From Octopus bimaculoides (Eukaryota), in NCBI RefSeq assembly GCF_001194135.2, contig NC_068981.1:57970300-58034299 (forward strand): a stretch of 64,000 nucleotides of DNA, in the 5' to 3' direction. The position numbers and the translations under genes were made by a program. Below are positions 47,801 to 62,800 of the stretch, piece by piece (the stretch's first letter is position 1; each line of letters begins with the position of its first letter). Below the pieces are notes generated by a model that was not told the origin of the DNA, made no database searches, and saw only the letters and a list, made by a program, of their open reading frames with translations.

Positions 47801-50800
47801 TTCCATACAATTCTTTCGGATAAAGAAACATCACCGTAAAGTGCGCATATTTCTTTGGCTGCTTGTGAGGCATTTTTCCCTTTACGGAAAAAGGAAAGCA
47901 TCAAGTGCCGATAATGAACTTTCTTATCTTCCATTTTAAAGGGTTACAGAATTAACACATATTATAGGAACAAAAACCTTCTTCCACGAAAAGATAGCTT
48001 AAACTGTGCTCTAAATGGAGGTGAAGTCAAATCCTATTTTATGAACTCAACCATGTTCTAAAGTAAGTCGAAAGTTAAGCTACTATAAATCAGCACAAAC
48101 TTTCCGGACAACCCAATACATACACAGATATATTATTAAATCTATTTTTATTGTCAGTTTTTATTCTTAATTCTTGTTTTGTTATATTTTTGTTTTTAGA
48201 GCTTTTGTTGTAATTAGTTGTTTGTTTACTGAGCAAATGATTTGCTAGTGTTATATATTCTTTCTTTTTGTTTTTGTCCAGTTTTCTCATCTGGTTCAAG
48301 TTGAATAGCATACATTTATATAGAATAATTTAATTAATTACTTTTTCATTTTTGTATTACTTCAGGGGAAATCATTTTGTTGTTGTGGGACTTCTCTCTG
48401 ATGGAACTGAGCTAGCTGTCAAGCTTTATCGAGCAAATGAATGCCCTGTGGTGTGTGGTGCCCTCAGGAAACTTTCACAAGTAAGCCTGGATTCCAGGTT
48501 TGTGGTGAATTATAAAGTAAGATTTTATTTCTCATTAGCTATTTTCCCTTCATTTTTCAGTTTATTTCACTGATCACAGCAGCTCATATTGTTACATAAT
48601 TTGCAGAAAAACATGATCAGAAGCCTTCTTTTTTTGAACTTCAATCCTAGAATTCTGTAGCTTATTGGCAAGTCTAGGATGACAATAATATGAAGTTAGT
48701 ATGGTTTAAATTACATTAACAATCCACAGTCAATCTGCAGTTAGGTTAAACCTTACTTCTGTTGAAATACACTGTCTTTGTTTCAATTAATTTTTAAAAA
48801 AATGACGAATTTAGTAAAATAATTTTGTCATTATTAAGCTAGTGTTAAGAACATAAATTAACATACCATTTTGATGGAAGATTTTAATTTAGGTCATTTT
48901 GAACCAGGATATTTGTATCATAGAATAAGGGACAATATCAGGTGGGTTGGTGTCAAAAGTGTTAATCAGCATCATCATTTAACATTGTCTTTCCCTGCTG
49001 GCATAGGTTAGATGGTTTGACTGGAACTGGTAAGCTGGAGGGCTGCACTAGGTTCCAGTCTGATTTAGCATGTAGACACCCTTCCTAACGCCAACCACTC
49101 TGAGAGTGTAATAGGTGCTTTTTATGTGCCATTTACATGACACTGGCAACAGCTGTTAGTACTAATGTTTCTAACATAGGAACGTGGTGAGCAGGCAGAA
49201 ATGTTAGCGGTATTTCATCCGTCTTTACGTTCCAAGTTCAAATTACACCGAGGTTTACTTTGCTTTTATCCTTTTGGGGTCAATAAATTAAGTACCAGTT
49301 GCATACTGGGGTTCAATCTAATCAATTGGTCCCCTCCCCCAAAATTGGGTCTTGTGCATAGAGTAGAAAAGAATGTTTCTAACATAGGCACAAGGACTGA
49401 AATTTTAGGGAGGAGTTTGCTCAGTACCCTTGACCTCAGTACTTAACTGGTACCTTATTTTATTGATCCTGTAAGGATGCTAGTTAACTTCAGAGGAGTT
49501 TTAACTCCCAAGTGCAGAGAAGTTGCAAGAAATAGTGCAAAGCACTGAATCTGATACTTTTACAACTCTGCCAATTGCAACCTGATTCCCAAAAACTCCA
49601 TCACTCAAAGAAACAGGAAAGAACAAAAACAAAGGTATGAAACATTTTTAAAAAACATCATAGCAATTATTTGGTATCATAAATTCTTGTTTCTCTGCTG
49701 TCAGCTGATTTGAAGAAACATTTTAGGAGGACATTATTGAATGATATAGATAATAGGATGGTGGTTTATAGAATTGATAGTGCGGTAGACAAAGTACTTG
49801 TGGTGTTTGGTCATGTTGCTTTATTTCTGAGTTCAGACCCCCATTTTAGTCTATTTTGCCTTTCAACCTTCTGATGTTAATAAAATCAGAAACAGCTTGC
49901 AACTACTGTGACTGATATAACTGACTAAAACCTTGAAAGCAGTGACTCAGCATGGTTATAGCAAAAAGTAAAAGATTATATGACAATGCTTTCTACTTTG
50001 ACATGTTTATAATTCATTGATGTTTATTCTGTCTAATTTCAGTCTGTGATGGTTGGCCAGAAATTCTTCCTGGCAACTATGAACCTGTGTGAATGCAATT
50101 TGAAAGAATACATTGATTGGAAAAAATACTCCAATAGGTTTGATCTCAACACAGCCTCTTACCTCTTCTGGCACATGGTTAGCAGTCTGAAATATTTGCA
50201 TGACAATAATATTGTACATGGACGACTTGAGGTAATCACTATTGCAGAATTTTGGTCAGGTTTCCCCCTCCTCTCCTCCTTCCTCCTCATCATCATTGTT
50301 ATCACCGTTATCAACAGCAGCATATCTAGCATCATCATTGTCATCATCATCACAATCATCTTCAAAGAAGATGTTTAAAGTTCAAACAAGCTGATTTAGT
50401 ATTCTGTGCACTGCTGTTCCTGGTGTTAAACTTTGTTGAGGTATGTTCAGTATAAAGTTTGTGATAATCTGTAATGTATCTGATTTATTTATGGAAAATC
50501 TAGAATCCTTCTTTAGTCAATCAACATTCTCACTGACACCATCCCCATCTTCTATTGATAATAATACTTTCAAATATATGATGTATGACTGTAATCATCC
50601 TTTCAATATTTCTAACAATACCTTAATAATCAGTTAGTGTGATAGTTAACCACTTCATCTTTGTTATGAGATATATTCATCAAACGGAGACCAATCATAT
50701 TGGCTTTCAAAAGTGAAGAAACAACATTTATAGTATTATCACCAGCTGATAATAACAGGCTTCAGTAGACTATACTATGCTGATGATGTCTCATATACCA

Positions 50801-59800: not shown

Positions 59801-62800
59801 AACAAGCTCTAAAGACTAACTAAAATGGAACATTGGAAACTGAATCTCAGAGTTTCAGAGTTAGGCCATATTGCTCACTAAACAGCAACTGCTTAAACAA
59901 AACTTGTACATAAAGTGATGATAATATCTTATAGATAGCATAAAACTGGAGAAATGTTATATTATGTGCAATGGTAGCTGCAAGAGCTATTTCTTCAACC
60001 ACATGTCCAGTATACTACAGGAAACAGAGAAAAGGCACATCAAACTTTTCTTAGAGCATGTTTGAAAACTGGTGGACTTGTGTGTGGAGCACTTTTGTCT
60101 AAAATAGTCAACACATCATACCATACATAAAGAGAGCAAAGAAGTGTCAACTAACTTAGAACCATTGAGAAATACTATATCTTAATTCAGCAACCTGCTT
60201 TAGTAAATGAATTAATTACTGAGTGCTTTGTGGGTATCATTCAAGATGTTTGATACCTCTCACTGGGAAGGTCTTTGTTTTCTAATATGATGAAAATCAA
60301 TCTGTTGGTTATATTACAATTTATAGCTTGCATTGTATTGTCTATTCAAGATAGTCAGAAATGCTGGCAACCATCAGAATTTCTTCGATCATGTGATGGC
60401 CAAAAGTTTTCAATAAAATCTGATATACAGGTGAGTAACAACCCAATATAATGGCTTTCATAGTAATTCTCTTTGCTTAATAAACCATATTGCATATGAA
60501 AATATATCACAAAGTTTTAATTAGATAAGCAAAATAAGTCTTTGGGAGTTATATTAATGATCATTGATTTTGATTAGGTATTAGAAATTTGACAAAGGGA
60601 AATAAGATATCCTGATGTTTATGGCTTTTAGATTTCAATTACTATAAGATTTCATATTTTTCCTTGCTTAACATGAGTTATCAGCTAATTATCAATCAGA
60701 TAGAAATAATTGGTGAATTTATGTTTCCATATTGATTTATTAACGTAAGCGTATGACATAATACTTTTCATATATTCTTTCATTGAACTCAGTAGATAAC
60801 TGGTGATCCTCTACACAGTCACTTTATCTATTAGAAACAGTAGATAAATTTCCTTCAAACCACACCTTACTGTCTTAGAAAAAGGAGAAATTAGACAATG
60901 TACTTACTGATACTTATAAAAAAATAGGTCAGATTGTCACAACTGGACTGCATTTGACTGTAGATTTGCTTAACCAAATCTAACTTGGAAATGAACAATA
61001 ACAATAGATAGACTTCTGTTTATCTCTGGTTTCTGTTGCTCACATTAAGTAGATGAGGGAAATCTTCCACTGTATAAGATGACAGCCTATTGCAAGCAAC
61101 TTTTTCTTGAACAATGCACTGGAATGACCAGCTGAAAAATGCTTCTGCTGTGACCATCTTGCTTTTTTTTTTTTTTTTTTTTTTGCATATCTAGGACAAC
61201 ATTATTCCCTGTGATTTTATCTTTTTGAGTGGAGTTAATCTGTTATCTGGTTTAATGCCACTCCTTGGTGCCTTTAAAAGAGTTTAATCTGTTGCAATAA
61301 TTTAAACCAGATCTCTAGTTGGAAGATAACTTCTTTCCTCCTTCTTATCAGTTTTAGATGACCTGAAAACAAAAATGATCATGGCTGCTGCTTTTCCCTA
61401 AGTGGTAAAAAATAGTGAAGATTTGGTTCAAACTATTTATCTGTTTCTTTGTTGTCTTAAATTGTGTGTAAATCCCCTTGTTTGCTCAGATTGCATAGAG
61501 CCCTATCATGTTTGAATATGCTTAATCCAATGAGTGTGTGTTTTAATCTTTTAAAAATGTGTACATCTTTAGAAACTCTAAGATAGTTTAGTGCAAACAT
61601 TTTGCATAACTCCCTCAGAAAGAGCCAAGTATCCAGCTTCTGAAGCTATATCAATTATTTGTGAACTTACTAAATTAAAGTGTTGACTTCCATCTTATTT
61701 ATTAGACATTAATATTACACTGAATAATTGGTTAATGAATCTCACACACATATACAAGCATCTAATATATACACACAGATGCACTTATGCAAAATCACAC
61801 AGAAACACAAACATGCACAAGCAATAAAATTTATCTAAGAATTACAATTGTTATTTTGTTTTCTAGGTTGCTGGTATGGTTGCTTATTTCATACTGAGTG
61901 GAGGCCATCACCCATTTGGTAAATCTTCTTCAGAAATACCACTCAATATCATTTTGCATGAAAAGCAGTTATGCAACCTAAGTTTGGAAGCAAGTGACAT
62001 TGTAACAATGATGTTATCAGCAATTCCTGATGAAAGGCCAACTGCAAGTGAAGTATTAAAGTGCGTCATGTTCATTTACACAGTTTATCATTGTTTTTAC
62101 AGTTTTACATTCATTTTTTTTATGTTAGCAAAGACTTTTTTTTTCACTGCTAACCACTCTGTACTAAAATTGAAAGAAAACTTACTAATACTGATATGAC
62201 ATATTTGACATATGTGTGTGTTATAGAAGGCAGTAGCAATAAAAATAGAATGTTAAAGATAAAAATTAACAAAGATATTAAAATGTTACCTTCAAAATAT
62301 TTAATTAGCCTTGATATTTTAAGTTAAAAACTTATTTTCAAAGCTTTATCTTTTATCCTTTACTTGATTCAGTCAGGAATTGAACTGAAGGTGTTATGAT
62401 TGTGAGCTCAGTACTCTAACCACTAGGCCATGTGCCTTCATAAGGCTACTAGAATAGTAATCAGTTAGTACTGCCACTATTGTTGTTATTGTCAGCAATT
62501 ATGTGTATTTTCAGAGCAGATTTTTTTTCCTATTACAAAAAGGGAAGGTAAATTTTCACAGGTGTGGCTGTATAATAAGAAGTTAGTTGCCCAAACACAT
62601 GCTTTTGGATTCACTCCCACTGCATGGCACCTTGGGCTAGTGTCTTCTACTGTAGCTCTGAGCTAACCAAAGCCTTGTGTGACTGATTTGTTGCCTTGAT
62701 TTTGCATGATAGTTGTAAACAAGTTCCACTTGTTTACAAGTGATAACTGTAAACAAGTGGTGCCCTTCATTTCCAATCTTCTGTCAAAACATTTCTGGTC

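What the first reader, a model, noticed from the sequence alone, without database searches (positions are those of the whole stretch)
48366..60430. Kinase domain is a pseudokinase: HRD to HGR, DFG to NYG, no glycine-rich loop, AVK lysine kept
Seen: the catalytic loop is IVHGRLEPKNILI (no catalytic Asp). The Mg-binding motif is LSNYG (no Asp). The GxGxxG position reads NVRGNHFVVVG. The APE position reads WQPSE. The beta3 lysine (AVK) and the catalytic-loop Asn are retained. Established: RNase L also has an inactive kinase domain that binds nucleotide and scaffolds dimerisation, whereas IRE1 keeps HRD and DFG. Inference: a non-catalytic, possibly still nucleotide-binding allosteric switch. Its substitutions differ from those I recall for RNase L (HQD, DFD), so catalytic loss may have been independent.
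Basis: partly seen in the sequence, partly recalled or inferred. Interest (0 to 1): 0.72.

Follow-up and report, generated by a model that had tools for sequence, protein, structure and literature searches.

The report
Octopus dead kinase domain, RNase L-like gene
These exons encode a kinase-shaped domain of an octopus ankyrin/kinase-like/nuclease-like protein that has lost the residues needed for kinase chemistry; the loss is real, old, shared with other molluscs and kept by selection, so it is a conserved dead kinase, probably a scaffold, and not a cephalopod oddity.

Summary
Window exons 48366-63155 (+) are identical to RefSeq Octopus bimaculoides LOC106873009. They encode a kinase fold reading HGR for HRD, NYG for DFG, N/R/H for the three P-loop glycines and no alphaC Glu. 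The AVK lysine and the catalytic-loop Asn are kept.

No other kinase-like exon lies in the window. The domain is under purifying selection against O. vulgaris (dN/dS about 0.10).

HGR, NYG and the lysine recur in cuttlefish. Bivalve and gastropod orthologues read HGN/HGF/HGE plus xYG, xYS or xCG, and ankyrin-bearing arthropod relatives read HGN, HGR or HGY. Loss of the HRD Asp is therefore at least mollusc-plus-annelid wide and occurs in arthropod relatives too; loss of the DFG Asp is shared by all sampled molluscs.

RNase L keeps both Asp (HQD, DFD), so these substitutions are not shared with it. IRE1 is the closest solved relative.

Outside cephalopods the beta3 Lys varies (K/R/Q/H/L/I), which argues against a family-wide nucleotide switch.

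The KEN nuclease core lies downstream of the window. In octopus and cuttlefish it has lost its catalytic His.

Best reading: a non-catalytic structural or dimerisation module. Moderate interest; a new variant of a known kind.

The parts
43441..45356 (+). Large linker exon. Its last codons (..LPLYIRNYNINV plus AG of the Arg codon) supply the strand before the degenerate P-loop.
   Evidence: tblastn of P0159 gives 100% identity over residues 746-1385. Donor is AG|GTAACC.
48366..48516 (+). Kinase-like exon A, the N-lobe. It holds the P-loop remnant (R)GNHFVVVG, the beta3 AVK (48415-48423), an alphaC region without Glu (PVVCGALRKL) and beta4 (VSLDSRFVVNYK). An in-frame alternative donor lies after 48480.
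   Evidence: The O. vulgaris model P0001 uses the upstream donor. Orthologues keep the longer form.
50043..50231 (+). Kinase-like exon B: beta5, hinge, alphaD and alphaE. It ends in IVHGRLE. HGR (50217-50225) replaces HRD.
53335..53446 (+). Kinase-like exon C: PKNILI (the catalytic-loop Asn is kept), then LSNYG, with NYG (53380-53388) replacing DFG, then the start of the activation segment. An in-frame alternative donor lies after 53428.
60351..60430 (+). Kinase-like exon D: CWQPSE (60365-60379, APE-equivalent, Glu kept) and KSDIQ (subdomain IX Asp kept).
61867..62060 (+). Kinase-like exon E: C-lobe helices (VAGMVAYFILSGGHHPFG ... DERPTASEVLK; subdomain XI Arg kept).
63073..63155 (+). Exon F: end of the kinase fold and start of the KEN domain (HPYFWSNQRKLQFLLTVGSDILNALMLQ). 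The rest of KEN lies beyond the window.
   Evidence: The remaining KEN exons were located in the O. vulgaris locus L001.
27130..31391 (+). Four ankyrin-repeat exons of the same gene: 27130-27228, 29870-29995, 30361-30459 and 31293-31391.
   Evidence: tblastn of P0159. Pfam Ank_2 scores 80.9 bits on P0159, with ankyrin-model stretches lying within residues 69-199.
32222..40547 (+). Exons of a conserved helical middle region (32222-32329, 33501-33848, 36228-36470) and the first large low-complexity linker exon (39588-40547).
   Evidence: tblastn of P0159. The middle region also matches the Solemya orthologue. It has no Pfam family.

Best explanation
The region is the kinase-homology domain of one large octopus gene, O. 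bimaculoides LOC106873009. The protein has N-terminal ankyrin repeats, about 1,150 residues of helical and disordered linker, a kinase-like domain and a KEN domain.

The domain keeps the kinase fold but cannot catalyse phosphotransfer in the canonical way. The catalytic base (HRD Asp) is Arg, and the Mg-binding Asp (DFG) is Asn. All three P-loop glycines and the alphaC Glu are gone.

The residues that hold the fold together are invariant in the family, and the domain evolves under purifying selection. These residues are:
- the His of HxD;
- the aromatic residue of xYG (both regulatory-spine positions);
- the catalytic-loop Asn;
- the APE Glu and the subdomain XI Arg;
- the subdomain IX Asp;
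- HPYFW.

Inferred mechanism: it works as a non-catalytic structural module. By analogy with IRE1 and RNase L, it most likely acts as the platform that pairs two protomers and positions the C-terminal KEN domains. It probably does this without canonical Mg-ATP binding.

The state is ancient. HGx is shared by molluscs and the one annelid sampled, and occurs in arthropod relatives. Loss of the DFG Asp is shared by all sampled molluscs. HGR/NYG is the cephalopod version.

In cephalopods the KEN catalytic His is also lost, so the octopus protein as a whole is probably non-enzymatic, acting as an adaptor or an RNA or ligand binder.
For: Shown:
- Motifs and exon structure are, and the product is identical to the RefSeq model.
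- No other kinase-like exon is present. A motif scan of both strands over 40-64 kb and tblastn of IRE1, RNase L and relatives against the whole window hit only exons A-F.
- The fold is supported by Pfam Pkinase at 70.4 bits. The AlphaFold2 model has mean pLDDT 86.5 and pTM 0.86, with low confidence only at the P-loop remnant and the activation loop. The best Foldseek matches are IRE1 kinase-RNase structures (TM 0.80-0.81), followed by RNase L (TM 0.63-0.66).
- Selection: against the colinear O. vulgaris exons there are 3 nonsynonymous and 8 synonymous differences. This gives dN 0.0047, dS 0.049 and omega 0.10. The binomial P is 3.5e-4 against neutral proportions. Introns are about 3-7% divergent, and the linker exons have omega 0.21-0.30.
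- Conservation: cuttlefish has ILHGRLKPENLL, LANYG, LAIKV and CWQPSE. Across the 14 lophotrochozoan family members aligned (13 molluscs and the annelid Owenia), 0 have Asp at the HRD position and 1 (Owenia) has Asp at the DFG position. The beta3 residue is K in 6, R in 3 and Q/H/L/I in 5. None has an alphaC Glu at the aligned position.
- Invariant columns include H135, P140, W182, E186, D201, G206, R260 and HP.FW.
- Four of the five arthropod relatives scanned, and the annelid, share N-terminal ankyrin repeats followed by an HGx kinase-like domain.
- Uninterrupted 1,100-1,800-residue reading frames on 3.9-5.9 kb Logan contigs indicate spliced transcripts in scallop, Pomacea and another mollusc.

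Inferred: the dimerisation/scaffold role. This rests on what IRE1 and RNase L kinase domains do (PMC4718504, read).
Against: - No biochemical data exist for any member.
- Nucleotide binding cannot be predicted reliably from sequence (PMC4718504). Cephalopods do keep the beta3 Lys, the Ala before it and the catalytic-loop Asn. A metal-independent nucleotide site therefore remains possible.
- The dimer interface was not examined.
- Expression of the octopus gene itself was not verified here.
- The KEN conclusions rest on sequence outside the window (the RefSeq protein and the O. vulgaris locus).
- The selection test rests on only 11 substitutions.
Confidence: 0.6

Rival explanations
1. Nucleotide-gated allosteric switch. 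The domain would still bind ATP or ADP without a metal ion. It would use the retained beta3 Lys, the catalytic-loop Asn and the new Arg of HGR to contact the phosphates. Binding would control the conformation or pairing of the protein.
For: - AVK/AIK, the preceding Ala and the PxN Asn are kept in octopus and cuttlefish.
- The cephalopod-specific N-to-R change at the HRD-Asp position adds a positive charge in the cleft.
- RNase L activity is enhanced by ATP binding, and some pseudokinases bind nucleotide with one or no cation (PMC4718504).
- STRADalpha is a precedent for metal-independent ATP binding (my own knowledge, not checked here).
Against: - The P-loop glycines, the alphaC Glu and the Mg-binding Asp are all absent.
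- In orthologues the Lys is R/Q/H/L/I, and the adenine-contacting Ala is M, L, G or S in scallop, mussel, abalone and zebra mussel. The pocket is therefore not under family-wide constraint.
- The P-loop remnant is the least confident part of the model.
Confidence: 0.22
2. Atypical but active kinase. Phosphotransfer would be rescued by residues from non-canonical positions, as in WNK or CASK.
For: Precedents exist for kinases that lack one canonical residue (PMC4718504). The Lys and the catalytic-loop Asn are present.
Against: Five canonical elements are missing at once: the HRD Asp, the DFG Asp, the three P-loop glycines (counted as one element), the alphaC Glu and the HRD Arg. No conserved compensating acidic residue stands out in the alignment. 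[quoted passage not shown]
Confidence: 0.04
3. Decaying relic. The kinase-like exons would be drifting and without function, or the gene would be a pseudogene or a mis-assembly.
For: The motifs are heavily degenerated. The octopus KEN has also lost catalytic residues. Introns are full of transposon debris and there are assembly gaps upstream.
Against: - The frame is open across all exons, with canonical splice sites, in two octopus species.
- Omega is 0.10.
- Identity to cuttlefish over kinase plus KEN is 45-46%, and to other molluscs 29-33%.
- The structural core residues are invariant.
- The structure prediction is confident.
Confidence: 0.04

Closest known systems
IRE1 (ERN1/Ire1p) cytoplasmic kinase-RNase module
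   Same: It is the closest solved relative by sequence (phmmer E 1.7e-29 over kinase plus KEN) and by predicted fold (TM 0.80-0.81). The order is the same: kinase fold followed directly by KEN through HPFFW. The activation segment has the same layout, with W-x-x-P/S-E, and the same C-lobe.
   Different: IRE1 has HRD, DFG, GxGxxG, the alphaC Glu and an active RNase (Y, R, N, H). The octopus protein has none of these kinase residues, and of the four RNase residues only Asn remains. IRE1 has an ER-luminal sensor and a membrane span. Here the N-terminus is ankyrin repeats followed by a very long linker. The automatic name 'IRE2' on the O. vulgaris model is not justified.
RNase L (2-5A-dependent ribonuclease, jawed vertebrates)
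   Same: The overall logic is the same: N-terminal ankyrin repeats, a catalytically dead kinase-homology domain and a C-terminal KEN domain. The beta3 Lys and the catalytic-loop Asn are kept in both.
   Different: - RNase L keeps both aspartates (HQD, DFD) and binds ATP canonically with two cations. The octopus domain has HGR and NYG.
- RNase L lacks the activation-segment/APE region, which the octopus domain keeps.
- In RNase L the ankyrin repeats abut the kinase domain. Here they are about 1,150 residues away.
- The RNase L KEN is active (R667, H672). The octopus KEN has Tyr and Leu at those columns.
- The sequence relationship is weak: RNase L does not reach E 1e-12, identity is 19% and TM is 0.63-0.66.
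- Published phylogeny restricts the RNase L lineage to jawed vertebrates and treats other ankyrin-bearing relatives as independent gains (PMC10400998).
Uncharacterised protostome proteins with ankyrin repeats, an HGx kinase-like domain and a KEN domain. Examples: Solemya KAL5021848, Patella KAK6174412, Argopecten XP_069113852, Mytilus XP_063441107, Ostrea XP_048759681, Biomphalaria XP_055891980, Owenia CAH1796528, Cimex XP_014245492 and Centruroides XP_023243680.
   Same: The architecture is the same, and so are the signature motifs: HGx for HRD, SDIQVAG, HPYFW and, in molluscs, xYG for DFG. Identity over kinase plus KEN is 29-33%. This is the family the octopus gene belongs to.
   Different: - Cephalopods have Arg where most molluscs have Asn (HGR against HGN), and Asn before YG.
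- They retain the beta3 Lys that many bivalves and gastropods have lost.
- They have lost the KEN His, and octopus also the KEN Tyr, that the other molluscs keep (YNCCLHF against YNTCILY and YNTWNRW).
STRADalpha and other pseudokinases lacking several motifs at once
   Same: Several canonical motifs are lost together while the active-like fold is kept and used for allostery or scaffolding. This is a general principle (PMC4718504). The STRADalpha details are from my own knowledge.
   Different: The kinase group is unrelated, there is no KEN domain, and no comparison was made here beyond the principle.

Membership tests
Pseudokinase (kinase fold lacking at least one of the beta3 Lys, the HRD Asp or the DFG Asp) | Protein-kinase fold | tested here: met
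   Pfam Pkinase scores 70.4 bits against a cut-off of 31.7. The AF2 model has pLDDT 86.5, and its Foldseek top hits are kinase-RNase structures.
Pseudokinase (kinase fold lacking at least one of the beta3 Lys, the HRD Asp or the DFG Asp) | Catalytic Asp of HRD absent | tested here: met
   HGR aligns to HRD in pairwise HMMER and in MAFFT alignments.
Pseudokinase (kinase fold lacking at least one of the beta3 Lys, the HRD Asp or the DFG Asp) | Metal-binding Asp of DFG absent | tested here: met
   NYG aligns to DFG.
Pseudokinase (kinase fold lacking at least one of the beta3 Lys, the HRD Asp or the DFG Asp) | No phosphotransfer activity | not testable with these tools
   This needs an autophosphorylation or substrate assay on purified protein.
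RNase L | N-terminal ankyrin repeats directly preceding the kinase-homology domain and binding 2-5A | tested here: inconclusive
   Ankyrin repeats are present (Pfam). There are only about four or five of them, and they lie about 1,150 residues from the kinase-like domain. The 2-5A-contacting residues were not examined.
RNase L | Pseudokinase that keeps the canonical two-cation nucleotide site (the Lys, the Asp of HxD and the Asp of DFx) | tested here: not met
   RNase L has HQD and DFD. The octopus has HGR and NYG.
RNase L | Active KEN nuclease (Tyr, Arg, Asn and His of the Rx4H motif) | tested here: not met
   In the RefSeq protein and the O. vulgaris locus (outside the window) the columns read Ile, Tyr, Asn and Leu.
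RNase L | Membership of the jawed-vertebrate RNase L clade | tested here: inconclusive
   RNase L is a much weaker match than IRE1. My NJ tree places RNase L among long degenerate branches and is not reliable. The literature restricts the clade to jawed vertebrates (PMC10400998).
IRE1 | ER-luminal sensor domain and transmembrane span N-terminal to the kinase | tested here: not met
   Pfam finds only ankyrin repeats upstream of the kinase-like domain. No dedicated transmembrane prediction was run.
IRE1 | Active kinase motifs (GxGxxG, VAIK Lys, alphaC Glu, HRD, DFG) | tested here: not met
   Only the Lys is present.
IRE1 | Kinase fold fused to a KEN domain, with closest sequence and structure similarity | tested here: met
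   phmmer E is 1.7e-29. Ribonuc_2-5A scores 32.8 bits against a cut-off of 23.3. TM is 0.80-0.81.
Protostome ankyrin / HGx kinase-like / KEN family (uncharacterised) | Ankyrin repeats, a long linker, a kinase-like domain with HGx in place of HRD, SDIQVAG and HPYFW leading into KEN | tested here: met
   The 14 lophotrochozoan sequences form one group in the NJ tree, with octopus and cuttlefish as a pair.

The most novel reading that the evidence does not exclude
Cephalopods would keep, under purifying selection since before the octopus-cuttlefish split, a 'double-dead' relative of IRE1/RNase L. Both the kinase and the KEN nuclease would be catalytically extinct. The cephalopod-specific Arg of HGR, together with the retained AVK Lys, would form a metal-independent ligand (nucleotide) pocket. 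The protein would then act as a ligand-gated, non-enzymatic RNA-binding or adaptor module. More broadly, protostomes would possess a conserved ankyrin-pseudokinase-KEN family, parallel to vertebrate RNase L, whose activating ligand and targets are unknown.
Probability: 0.25. Interest if true: 0.65.

Novelty: new variant of a known kind. Interest (0 to 1): 0.45.

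Why it matters
RNase L is the textbook case of a kinase fold kept as a non-catalytic platform for a KEN nuclease, and it is regarded as an invention of jawed vertebrates.

The octopus domain belongs to a protostome family with a similar overall build. The family is conserved and, in the literature I could search, undescribed. Its active site is degraded differently and more deeply than in RNase L. In cephalopods the nuclease is degraded too.

This offers a natural test of what an IRE1/RNase L-type kinase fold does once both nucleotide chemistry and nuclease chemistry are removed. 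It also flags misleading database names ('IRE2', 'IRE1') on these genes.

It is not a surprise in kind. Pseudokinases make up about a tenth of the human kinome, and ankyrin-bearing KEN proteins outside vertebrates have been noted in passing (PMC3710099, PMC10400998).

Tried and rejected
- **First homology search.** A word-index search with the 177-residue exon A-D peptide found nothing, not even the species' own RefSeq protein. The index apparently misses matches deep inside long proteins. Full HMMER, and later searches with the whole protein and with a composite query, solved this.
- **Alternative exon supplying HRD or DFG.** Rejected. No motif match with kinase context was found on either strand from 40 to 64 kb. 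No extra tblastn hit was found for IRE1, RNase L or relatives.
- **Gene-model artefact.** Rejected for O. bimaculoides, where my model equals RefSeq. The O. vulgaris model is the faulty one: it uses two in-frame alternative donors and misses two KEN exons that are present in its DNA.
- **Placing the family relative to RNase L with an NJ tree.** RNase L groups with other long degenerate branches. I treat this as uninformative, because of long-branch effects and because no ML or bootstrap analysis was possible.
- **Regex motif labels.** Labels mislabel some DFG positions, for example 'VYG' for octopus. The HMM and MAFFT tables are the ones to trust.
- **Literature searches for this family.** Searches found no description of it. 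One search was too loose to be useful.

Full report
**1. What is in the sequence**

The window is eukaryotic DNA of about 33-40% G+C with assembly gaps. On the + strand the quoted peptides are all present:
- AVK at 48415-48423.
- IVHGRLE, with HGR at 50217-50225.
- PKNILI...LSNYG, with NYG at 53380-53388.
- CWQPSE at 60365-60379.

They lie in four short exons:
- Exon A: 48366-48516.
- Exon B: 50043-50231.
- Exon C: 53335-53446.
- Exon D: 60351-60430.

All four have AG/GT boundaries and join in one frame. The preceding 1.9-kb exon ends ...NINV plus AG, which completes the Arg of 'NVRGNHF'. Two further exons finish the kinase fold and begin a KEN domain with HPYFWSNQRKLQF: exon E at 61867-62060 and exon F at 63073-63155. 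The finding's coordinates therefore cover exons A-D of a six-exon domain.

**2. Identity of the gene**

A full HMMER scan of 1.8 billion representatives found a 99%-identical Octopus vulgaris model. That model is CAI9715102, automatically named 'IRE2'. A later search found the O. bimaculoides RefSeq protein LOC106873009 isoform X2 (P0159, 1764 aa). Its kinase region is identical to my spliced model, including the positions where O. vulgaris differs. The window is therefore O. bimaculoides, and the exon model is independently supported.

The Pfam architecture of P0159 is:
- Ankyrin repeats within residues 69-199.
- No known domain for about 1,150 residues.
- Pkinase at 1425-1631 (70.4 bits). 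Only profile positions 54-263 match, so the P-loop/beta3 part is too divergent to align.
- Ribonuc_2-5A (KEN) at 1676-1761 (32.8 bits against a cut-off of 23.3).

tblastn maps all these exons onto the window from about 16.1 kb to 63.2 kb. The last three KEN exons lie beyond the window.

**3. Are the motifs at the canonical positions?**

Pairwise HMMER against PDB chains makes IRE1 the best solved relative (E 5e-24 for the kinase alone and 1.7e-29 with KEN). It aligns HGRLEPKNIL to HRDLKPHNIL, SNYG to SDFG and AVK to AVK.

A 19-sequence MAFFT alignment adds two IRE1 sequences, human RNase L, a lungfish relative and a fish relative. It shows the following:
- The three glycines of GxGxxG correspond to N, R and H.
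- The alphaC Glu column is Ala/Gly (..CGAL..).
- WQPSE sits on WIAPE.
- The catalytic-loop Asn, the APE Glu, the subdomain IX Asp and the subdomain XI Arg are retained.

RNase L was checked against PDB 4OAU/4O1O.

**4. Could another exon restore activity?**

No. A motif scan of both strands from 40 to 64 kb found nothing with kinase context. tblastn of IRE1, RNase L, two vertebrate relatives (a lungfish and a fish protein) and a bivalve orthologue against the whole window hit only exons A-F in the kinase region.

Two in-frame alternative donors exist, after 48480 and after 53428. The O. vulgaris model uses them. They would delete 12 residues (beta4) and 6 activation-loop residues respectively, and they add nothing. 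Orthologues keep the longer form.

**5. Is the domain alive?**

The O. vulgaris locus (L001) is colinear with the window. Over exons A-F there are 8 synonymous and 3 nonsynonymous differences. This gives dS 0.049, dN 0.0047 and omega 0.10. The binomial P is 3.5e-4 against neutral proportions. Flanking introns differ by about 3-7%, and the two linker exons have omega 0.21-0.30. The kinase-like domain is thus the most constrained part measured.

AlphaFold2, run with a 23-sequence alignment, gives mean pLDDT 86.5 and pTM 0.86. Confidence is low only at residues 22-26 (the P-loop remnant) and 161-172 (the activation loop). Foldseek ranks IRE1 kinase-RNase structures first (TM 0.80-0.81, E 1e-22). 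RNase L comes next (TM 0.63-0.66), followed by ordinary kinases.

**6. How old is the loss?**

The cuttlefish Acanthosepion pharaonis orthologue (46% identical) has ILHGRLKPENLL, LANYG, LAIKV and CWQPSE. HGR, NYG and the Lys therefore predate the split between octopus and cuttlefish.

The next-best HMMER hits (28-37% identity over the matched stretches) are long uncharacterised proteins. They come from bivalves (Solemya, Argopecten, Mytilus, Ostrea, Pinctada, Dreissena), gastropods (Patella, Haliotis, Biomphalaria, Pomacea, Gigantopelta) and the annelid Owenia. The best-scoring cnidarian hits (Xenia, Exaiptasia), of similar score, have canonical or near-canonical motifs (HRD/HRN, DFG) and are not part of this group.

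Among the 14 aligned lophotrochozoan sequences (13 molluscs plus Owenia), one search shows:
- None has Asp at the HRD position. They read HGN, HGF, HGE or HGR.
- Only Owenia has Asp at the DFG position (DYR). The others read N/H/G/E/A/W followed by YG, YS or CG.
- The beta3 residue is K in 6, R in 3 and Q, H, Q, L, I in 5.
- The Ala before it is M, L, G or S in four species.

Insect and arachnid relatives read HGN, HGR, HGY or HGF, with DFG or EFG in most. They include Cimex, Nicrophorus, Orussus, Schistocerca, Diploptera, Stegodyphus, Parasteatoda and Centruroides. Four of the five arthropod proteins scanned with Pfam carry N-terminal ankyrin repeats.

From this I draw three conclusions:
- Replacement of the catalytic Asp is shared across molluscs and the one annelid sampled, and occurs in arthropod relatives. 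It is either ancestral to protostomes or recurrent.
- Loss of the Mg-binding Asp is shared by all sampled molluscs.
- HGR/NYG is the cephalopod flavour.

Uninterrupted 1,100-1,800-residue frames on 3.9-5.9-kb Logan contigs indicate spliced transcripts in scallop, Pomacea and another mollusc.

**7. Relation to RNase L**

RNase L keeps both aspartates and binds ATP canonically with two cations (PMC4718504). It lacks the activation-segment/APE stretch that the octopus domain retains. The particular losses seen here are therefore not inherited from a shared ancestor with RNase L, and in that sense they are independent.

I could not settle whether the protostome family is the sister group of RNase L. 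My NJ tree groups RNase L with other long, degenerate branches, and I do not trust it. A published phylogeny confines the RNase L lineage to jawed vertebrates. It regards ankyrin repeats in other KEN proteins as independent gains (PMC10400998). An earlier survey noted KEN fused to kinase and ankyrin domains in some eukaryotes (PMC3710099). I found no paper describing this family or its motif pattern.

**8. The KEN domain (outside the window, but decisive for mechanism)**

IRE1 and RNase L use a Tyr and an R-N-x-x-x-H motif. My knowledge of the yeast residues Y1043, R1056, N1057 and H1061 is consistent with PMC3710099. The aligned columns read as follows:
- IRE1: SYK...RNKKHHY.
- RNase L: FYQ...RNLGEHI.
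- Mollusc consensus: QYK...YNCCLHF. Tyr, Asn and His are kept and Arg has become Tyr.
- Octopus: PIR...YNTCILY.
- Cuttlefish: QYQ...YNTWNRW.

The same octopus residues are encoded in the O. vulgaris genome (L001 70216-70332). Cephalopods have therefore lost the catalytic His, and octopus has lost the Tyr as well.

The O. vulgaris protein model lacks this region only because two exons were missed.

**9. Mechanism**

Shown:
- A folded, selectively maintained kinase-like domain without the catalytic base, the Mg ligand, the P-loop glycines or the alphaC Glu.
- Family-wide invariance of the fold-stabilising residues and of the two regulatory-spine positions (the His of HGx and the aromatic residue of xYG).

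Inferred: it serves as a rigid, active-like scaffold. Most plausibly it is the pairing platform that IRE1 and RNase L kinase domains provide for their KEN domains, working without phosphotransfer and probably without canonical Mg-ATP binding.

In cephalopods the KEN nuclease is itself degenerate, so the octopus protein is likely non-enzymatic overall.

The main rival is a metal-independent nucleotide switch. It is kept alive by the cephalopod-conserved Lys, Ala and Asn and by the new Arg. It is weakened by the variability of the pocket in other molluscs.

An atypical active kinase and a decaying relic are both unlikely.

**10. Verdict**

The domain is a genuine, conserved pseudokinase of a protostome ankyrin/pseudokinase/KEN family that I could not find described. 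This makes it a new variant of the kind exemplified by RNase L. It is of moderate interest.

Noticed in passing
Beyond the window end. O. vulgaris locus L001 68924-69007, 70216-70332 and 77515-77649; P0159 residues about 1655-1764.: The KEN (RNase) domain of the same gene has lost its catalytic His in octopus (Leu) and cuttlefish (Arg). In octopus it has also lost the catalytic Tyr (Ile). The Arg of the Rx4H motif is Tyr in 12 of the 13 mollusc sequences aligned (His in Dreissena); the annelid Owenia reads His-Ser. Other molluscs keep Tyr, Asn and His. The octopus protein may therefore be dead as a nuclease as well as dead as a kinase.
   Followed up: partly
window 48481-48516 and 53429-53446; L001: The O. 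vulgaris database model (CAI9715102, named 'IRE2') uses two in-frame alternative donors. These drop VSLDSRFVVNYK and six activation-loop residues. The model also omits two KEN exons that are present and intact in its genome. Both the name and the model are misleading. Whether the alternative donors are used in vivo is unknown.
   Followed up: yes
window 32222-36470 (exons at 32222-32329, 33501-33848 and 36228-36470): A conserved, apparently helical region of about 250 residues lies between the ankyrin repeats and the disordered linker. It is also recognisable in the bivalve Solemya (tblastn) but matches no Pfam family. It may be an undescribed domain of this family.
   Followed up: partly
window 39588-40547 and 43441-45356: Two very large exons encode about 960 residues of low-complexity, Ser/Asn/Lys/Asp-rich linker. 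They include a repeated block of the form (T)PDVN..TPDV / LVDVTPVA(I/K)TT. They evolve faster than the kinase exons (omega 0.21-0.30) but not neutrally.
   Followed up: partly
window 52055-52351 (-), 54852-55082 (+) and about 57020-57540: The long introns between the kinase exons carry transposon debris. There is a mariner-type transposase remnant (Pfam Transposase_1, 53.5 bits) and a weak reverse-transcriptase fragment (RVT_1, 19 bits, below the cut-off). There is also a stretch that reads in translation as long homopolymer runs (Leu, Ile, Ser, Tyr, Cys, depending on frame) and is probably a microsatellite.
   Followed up: partly
window 16105-16248 (+) and 2086-2355 (+): The first coding exon of RefSeq isoform X2 resembles a Brinker/pogo-type helix-turn-helix (BrkDBD, 25.1 bits) and is probably transposon-derived. 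The O. vulgaris model instead starts in a different upstream exon, which corresponds to window 2086-2355. The true 5' end of the gene is therefore uncertain.
   Followed up: partly
window 10806-11326, 19403-19511, 21614-22342 and 23610-23824: There are four assembly gaps (runs of N) in the upstream introns. Small exons could be hidden there.
   Followed up: no
proteins P0032, P0036, P0042, P0043, P0045, P0048, P0052, P0055, P0056, P0060, P0066 and P0081: Insects and arachnids have uncharacterised relatives with HGN, HGR, HGY or HGF in place of HRD. Four of the five scanned with Pfam carry N-terminal ankyrin repeats. Several are auto-named IRE1 or IRE2-like. A large clade with canonical HRD/DFG plus the 'SDIQVAG' motif exists in fishes and lungfish, with an RNase L-like KEN (FIRNLHEH).
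   Followed up: partly
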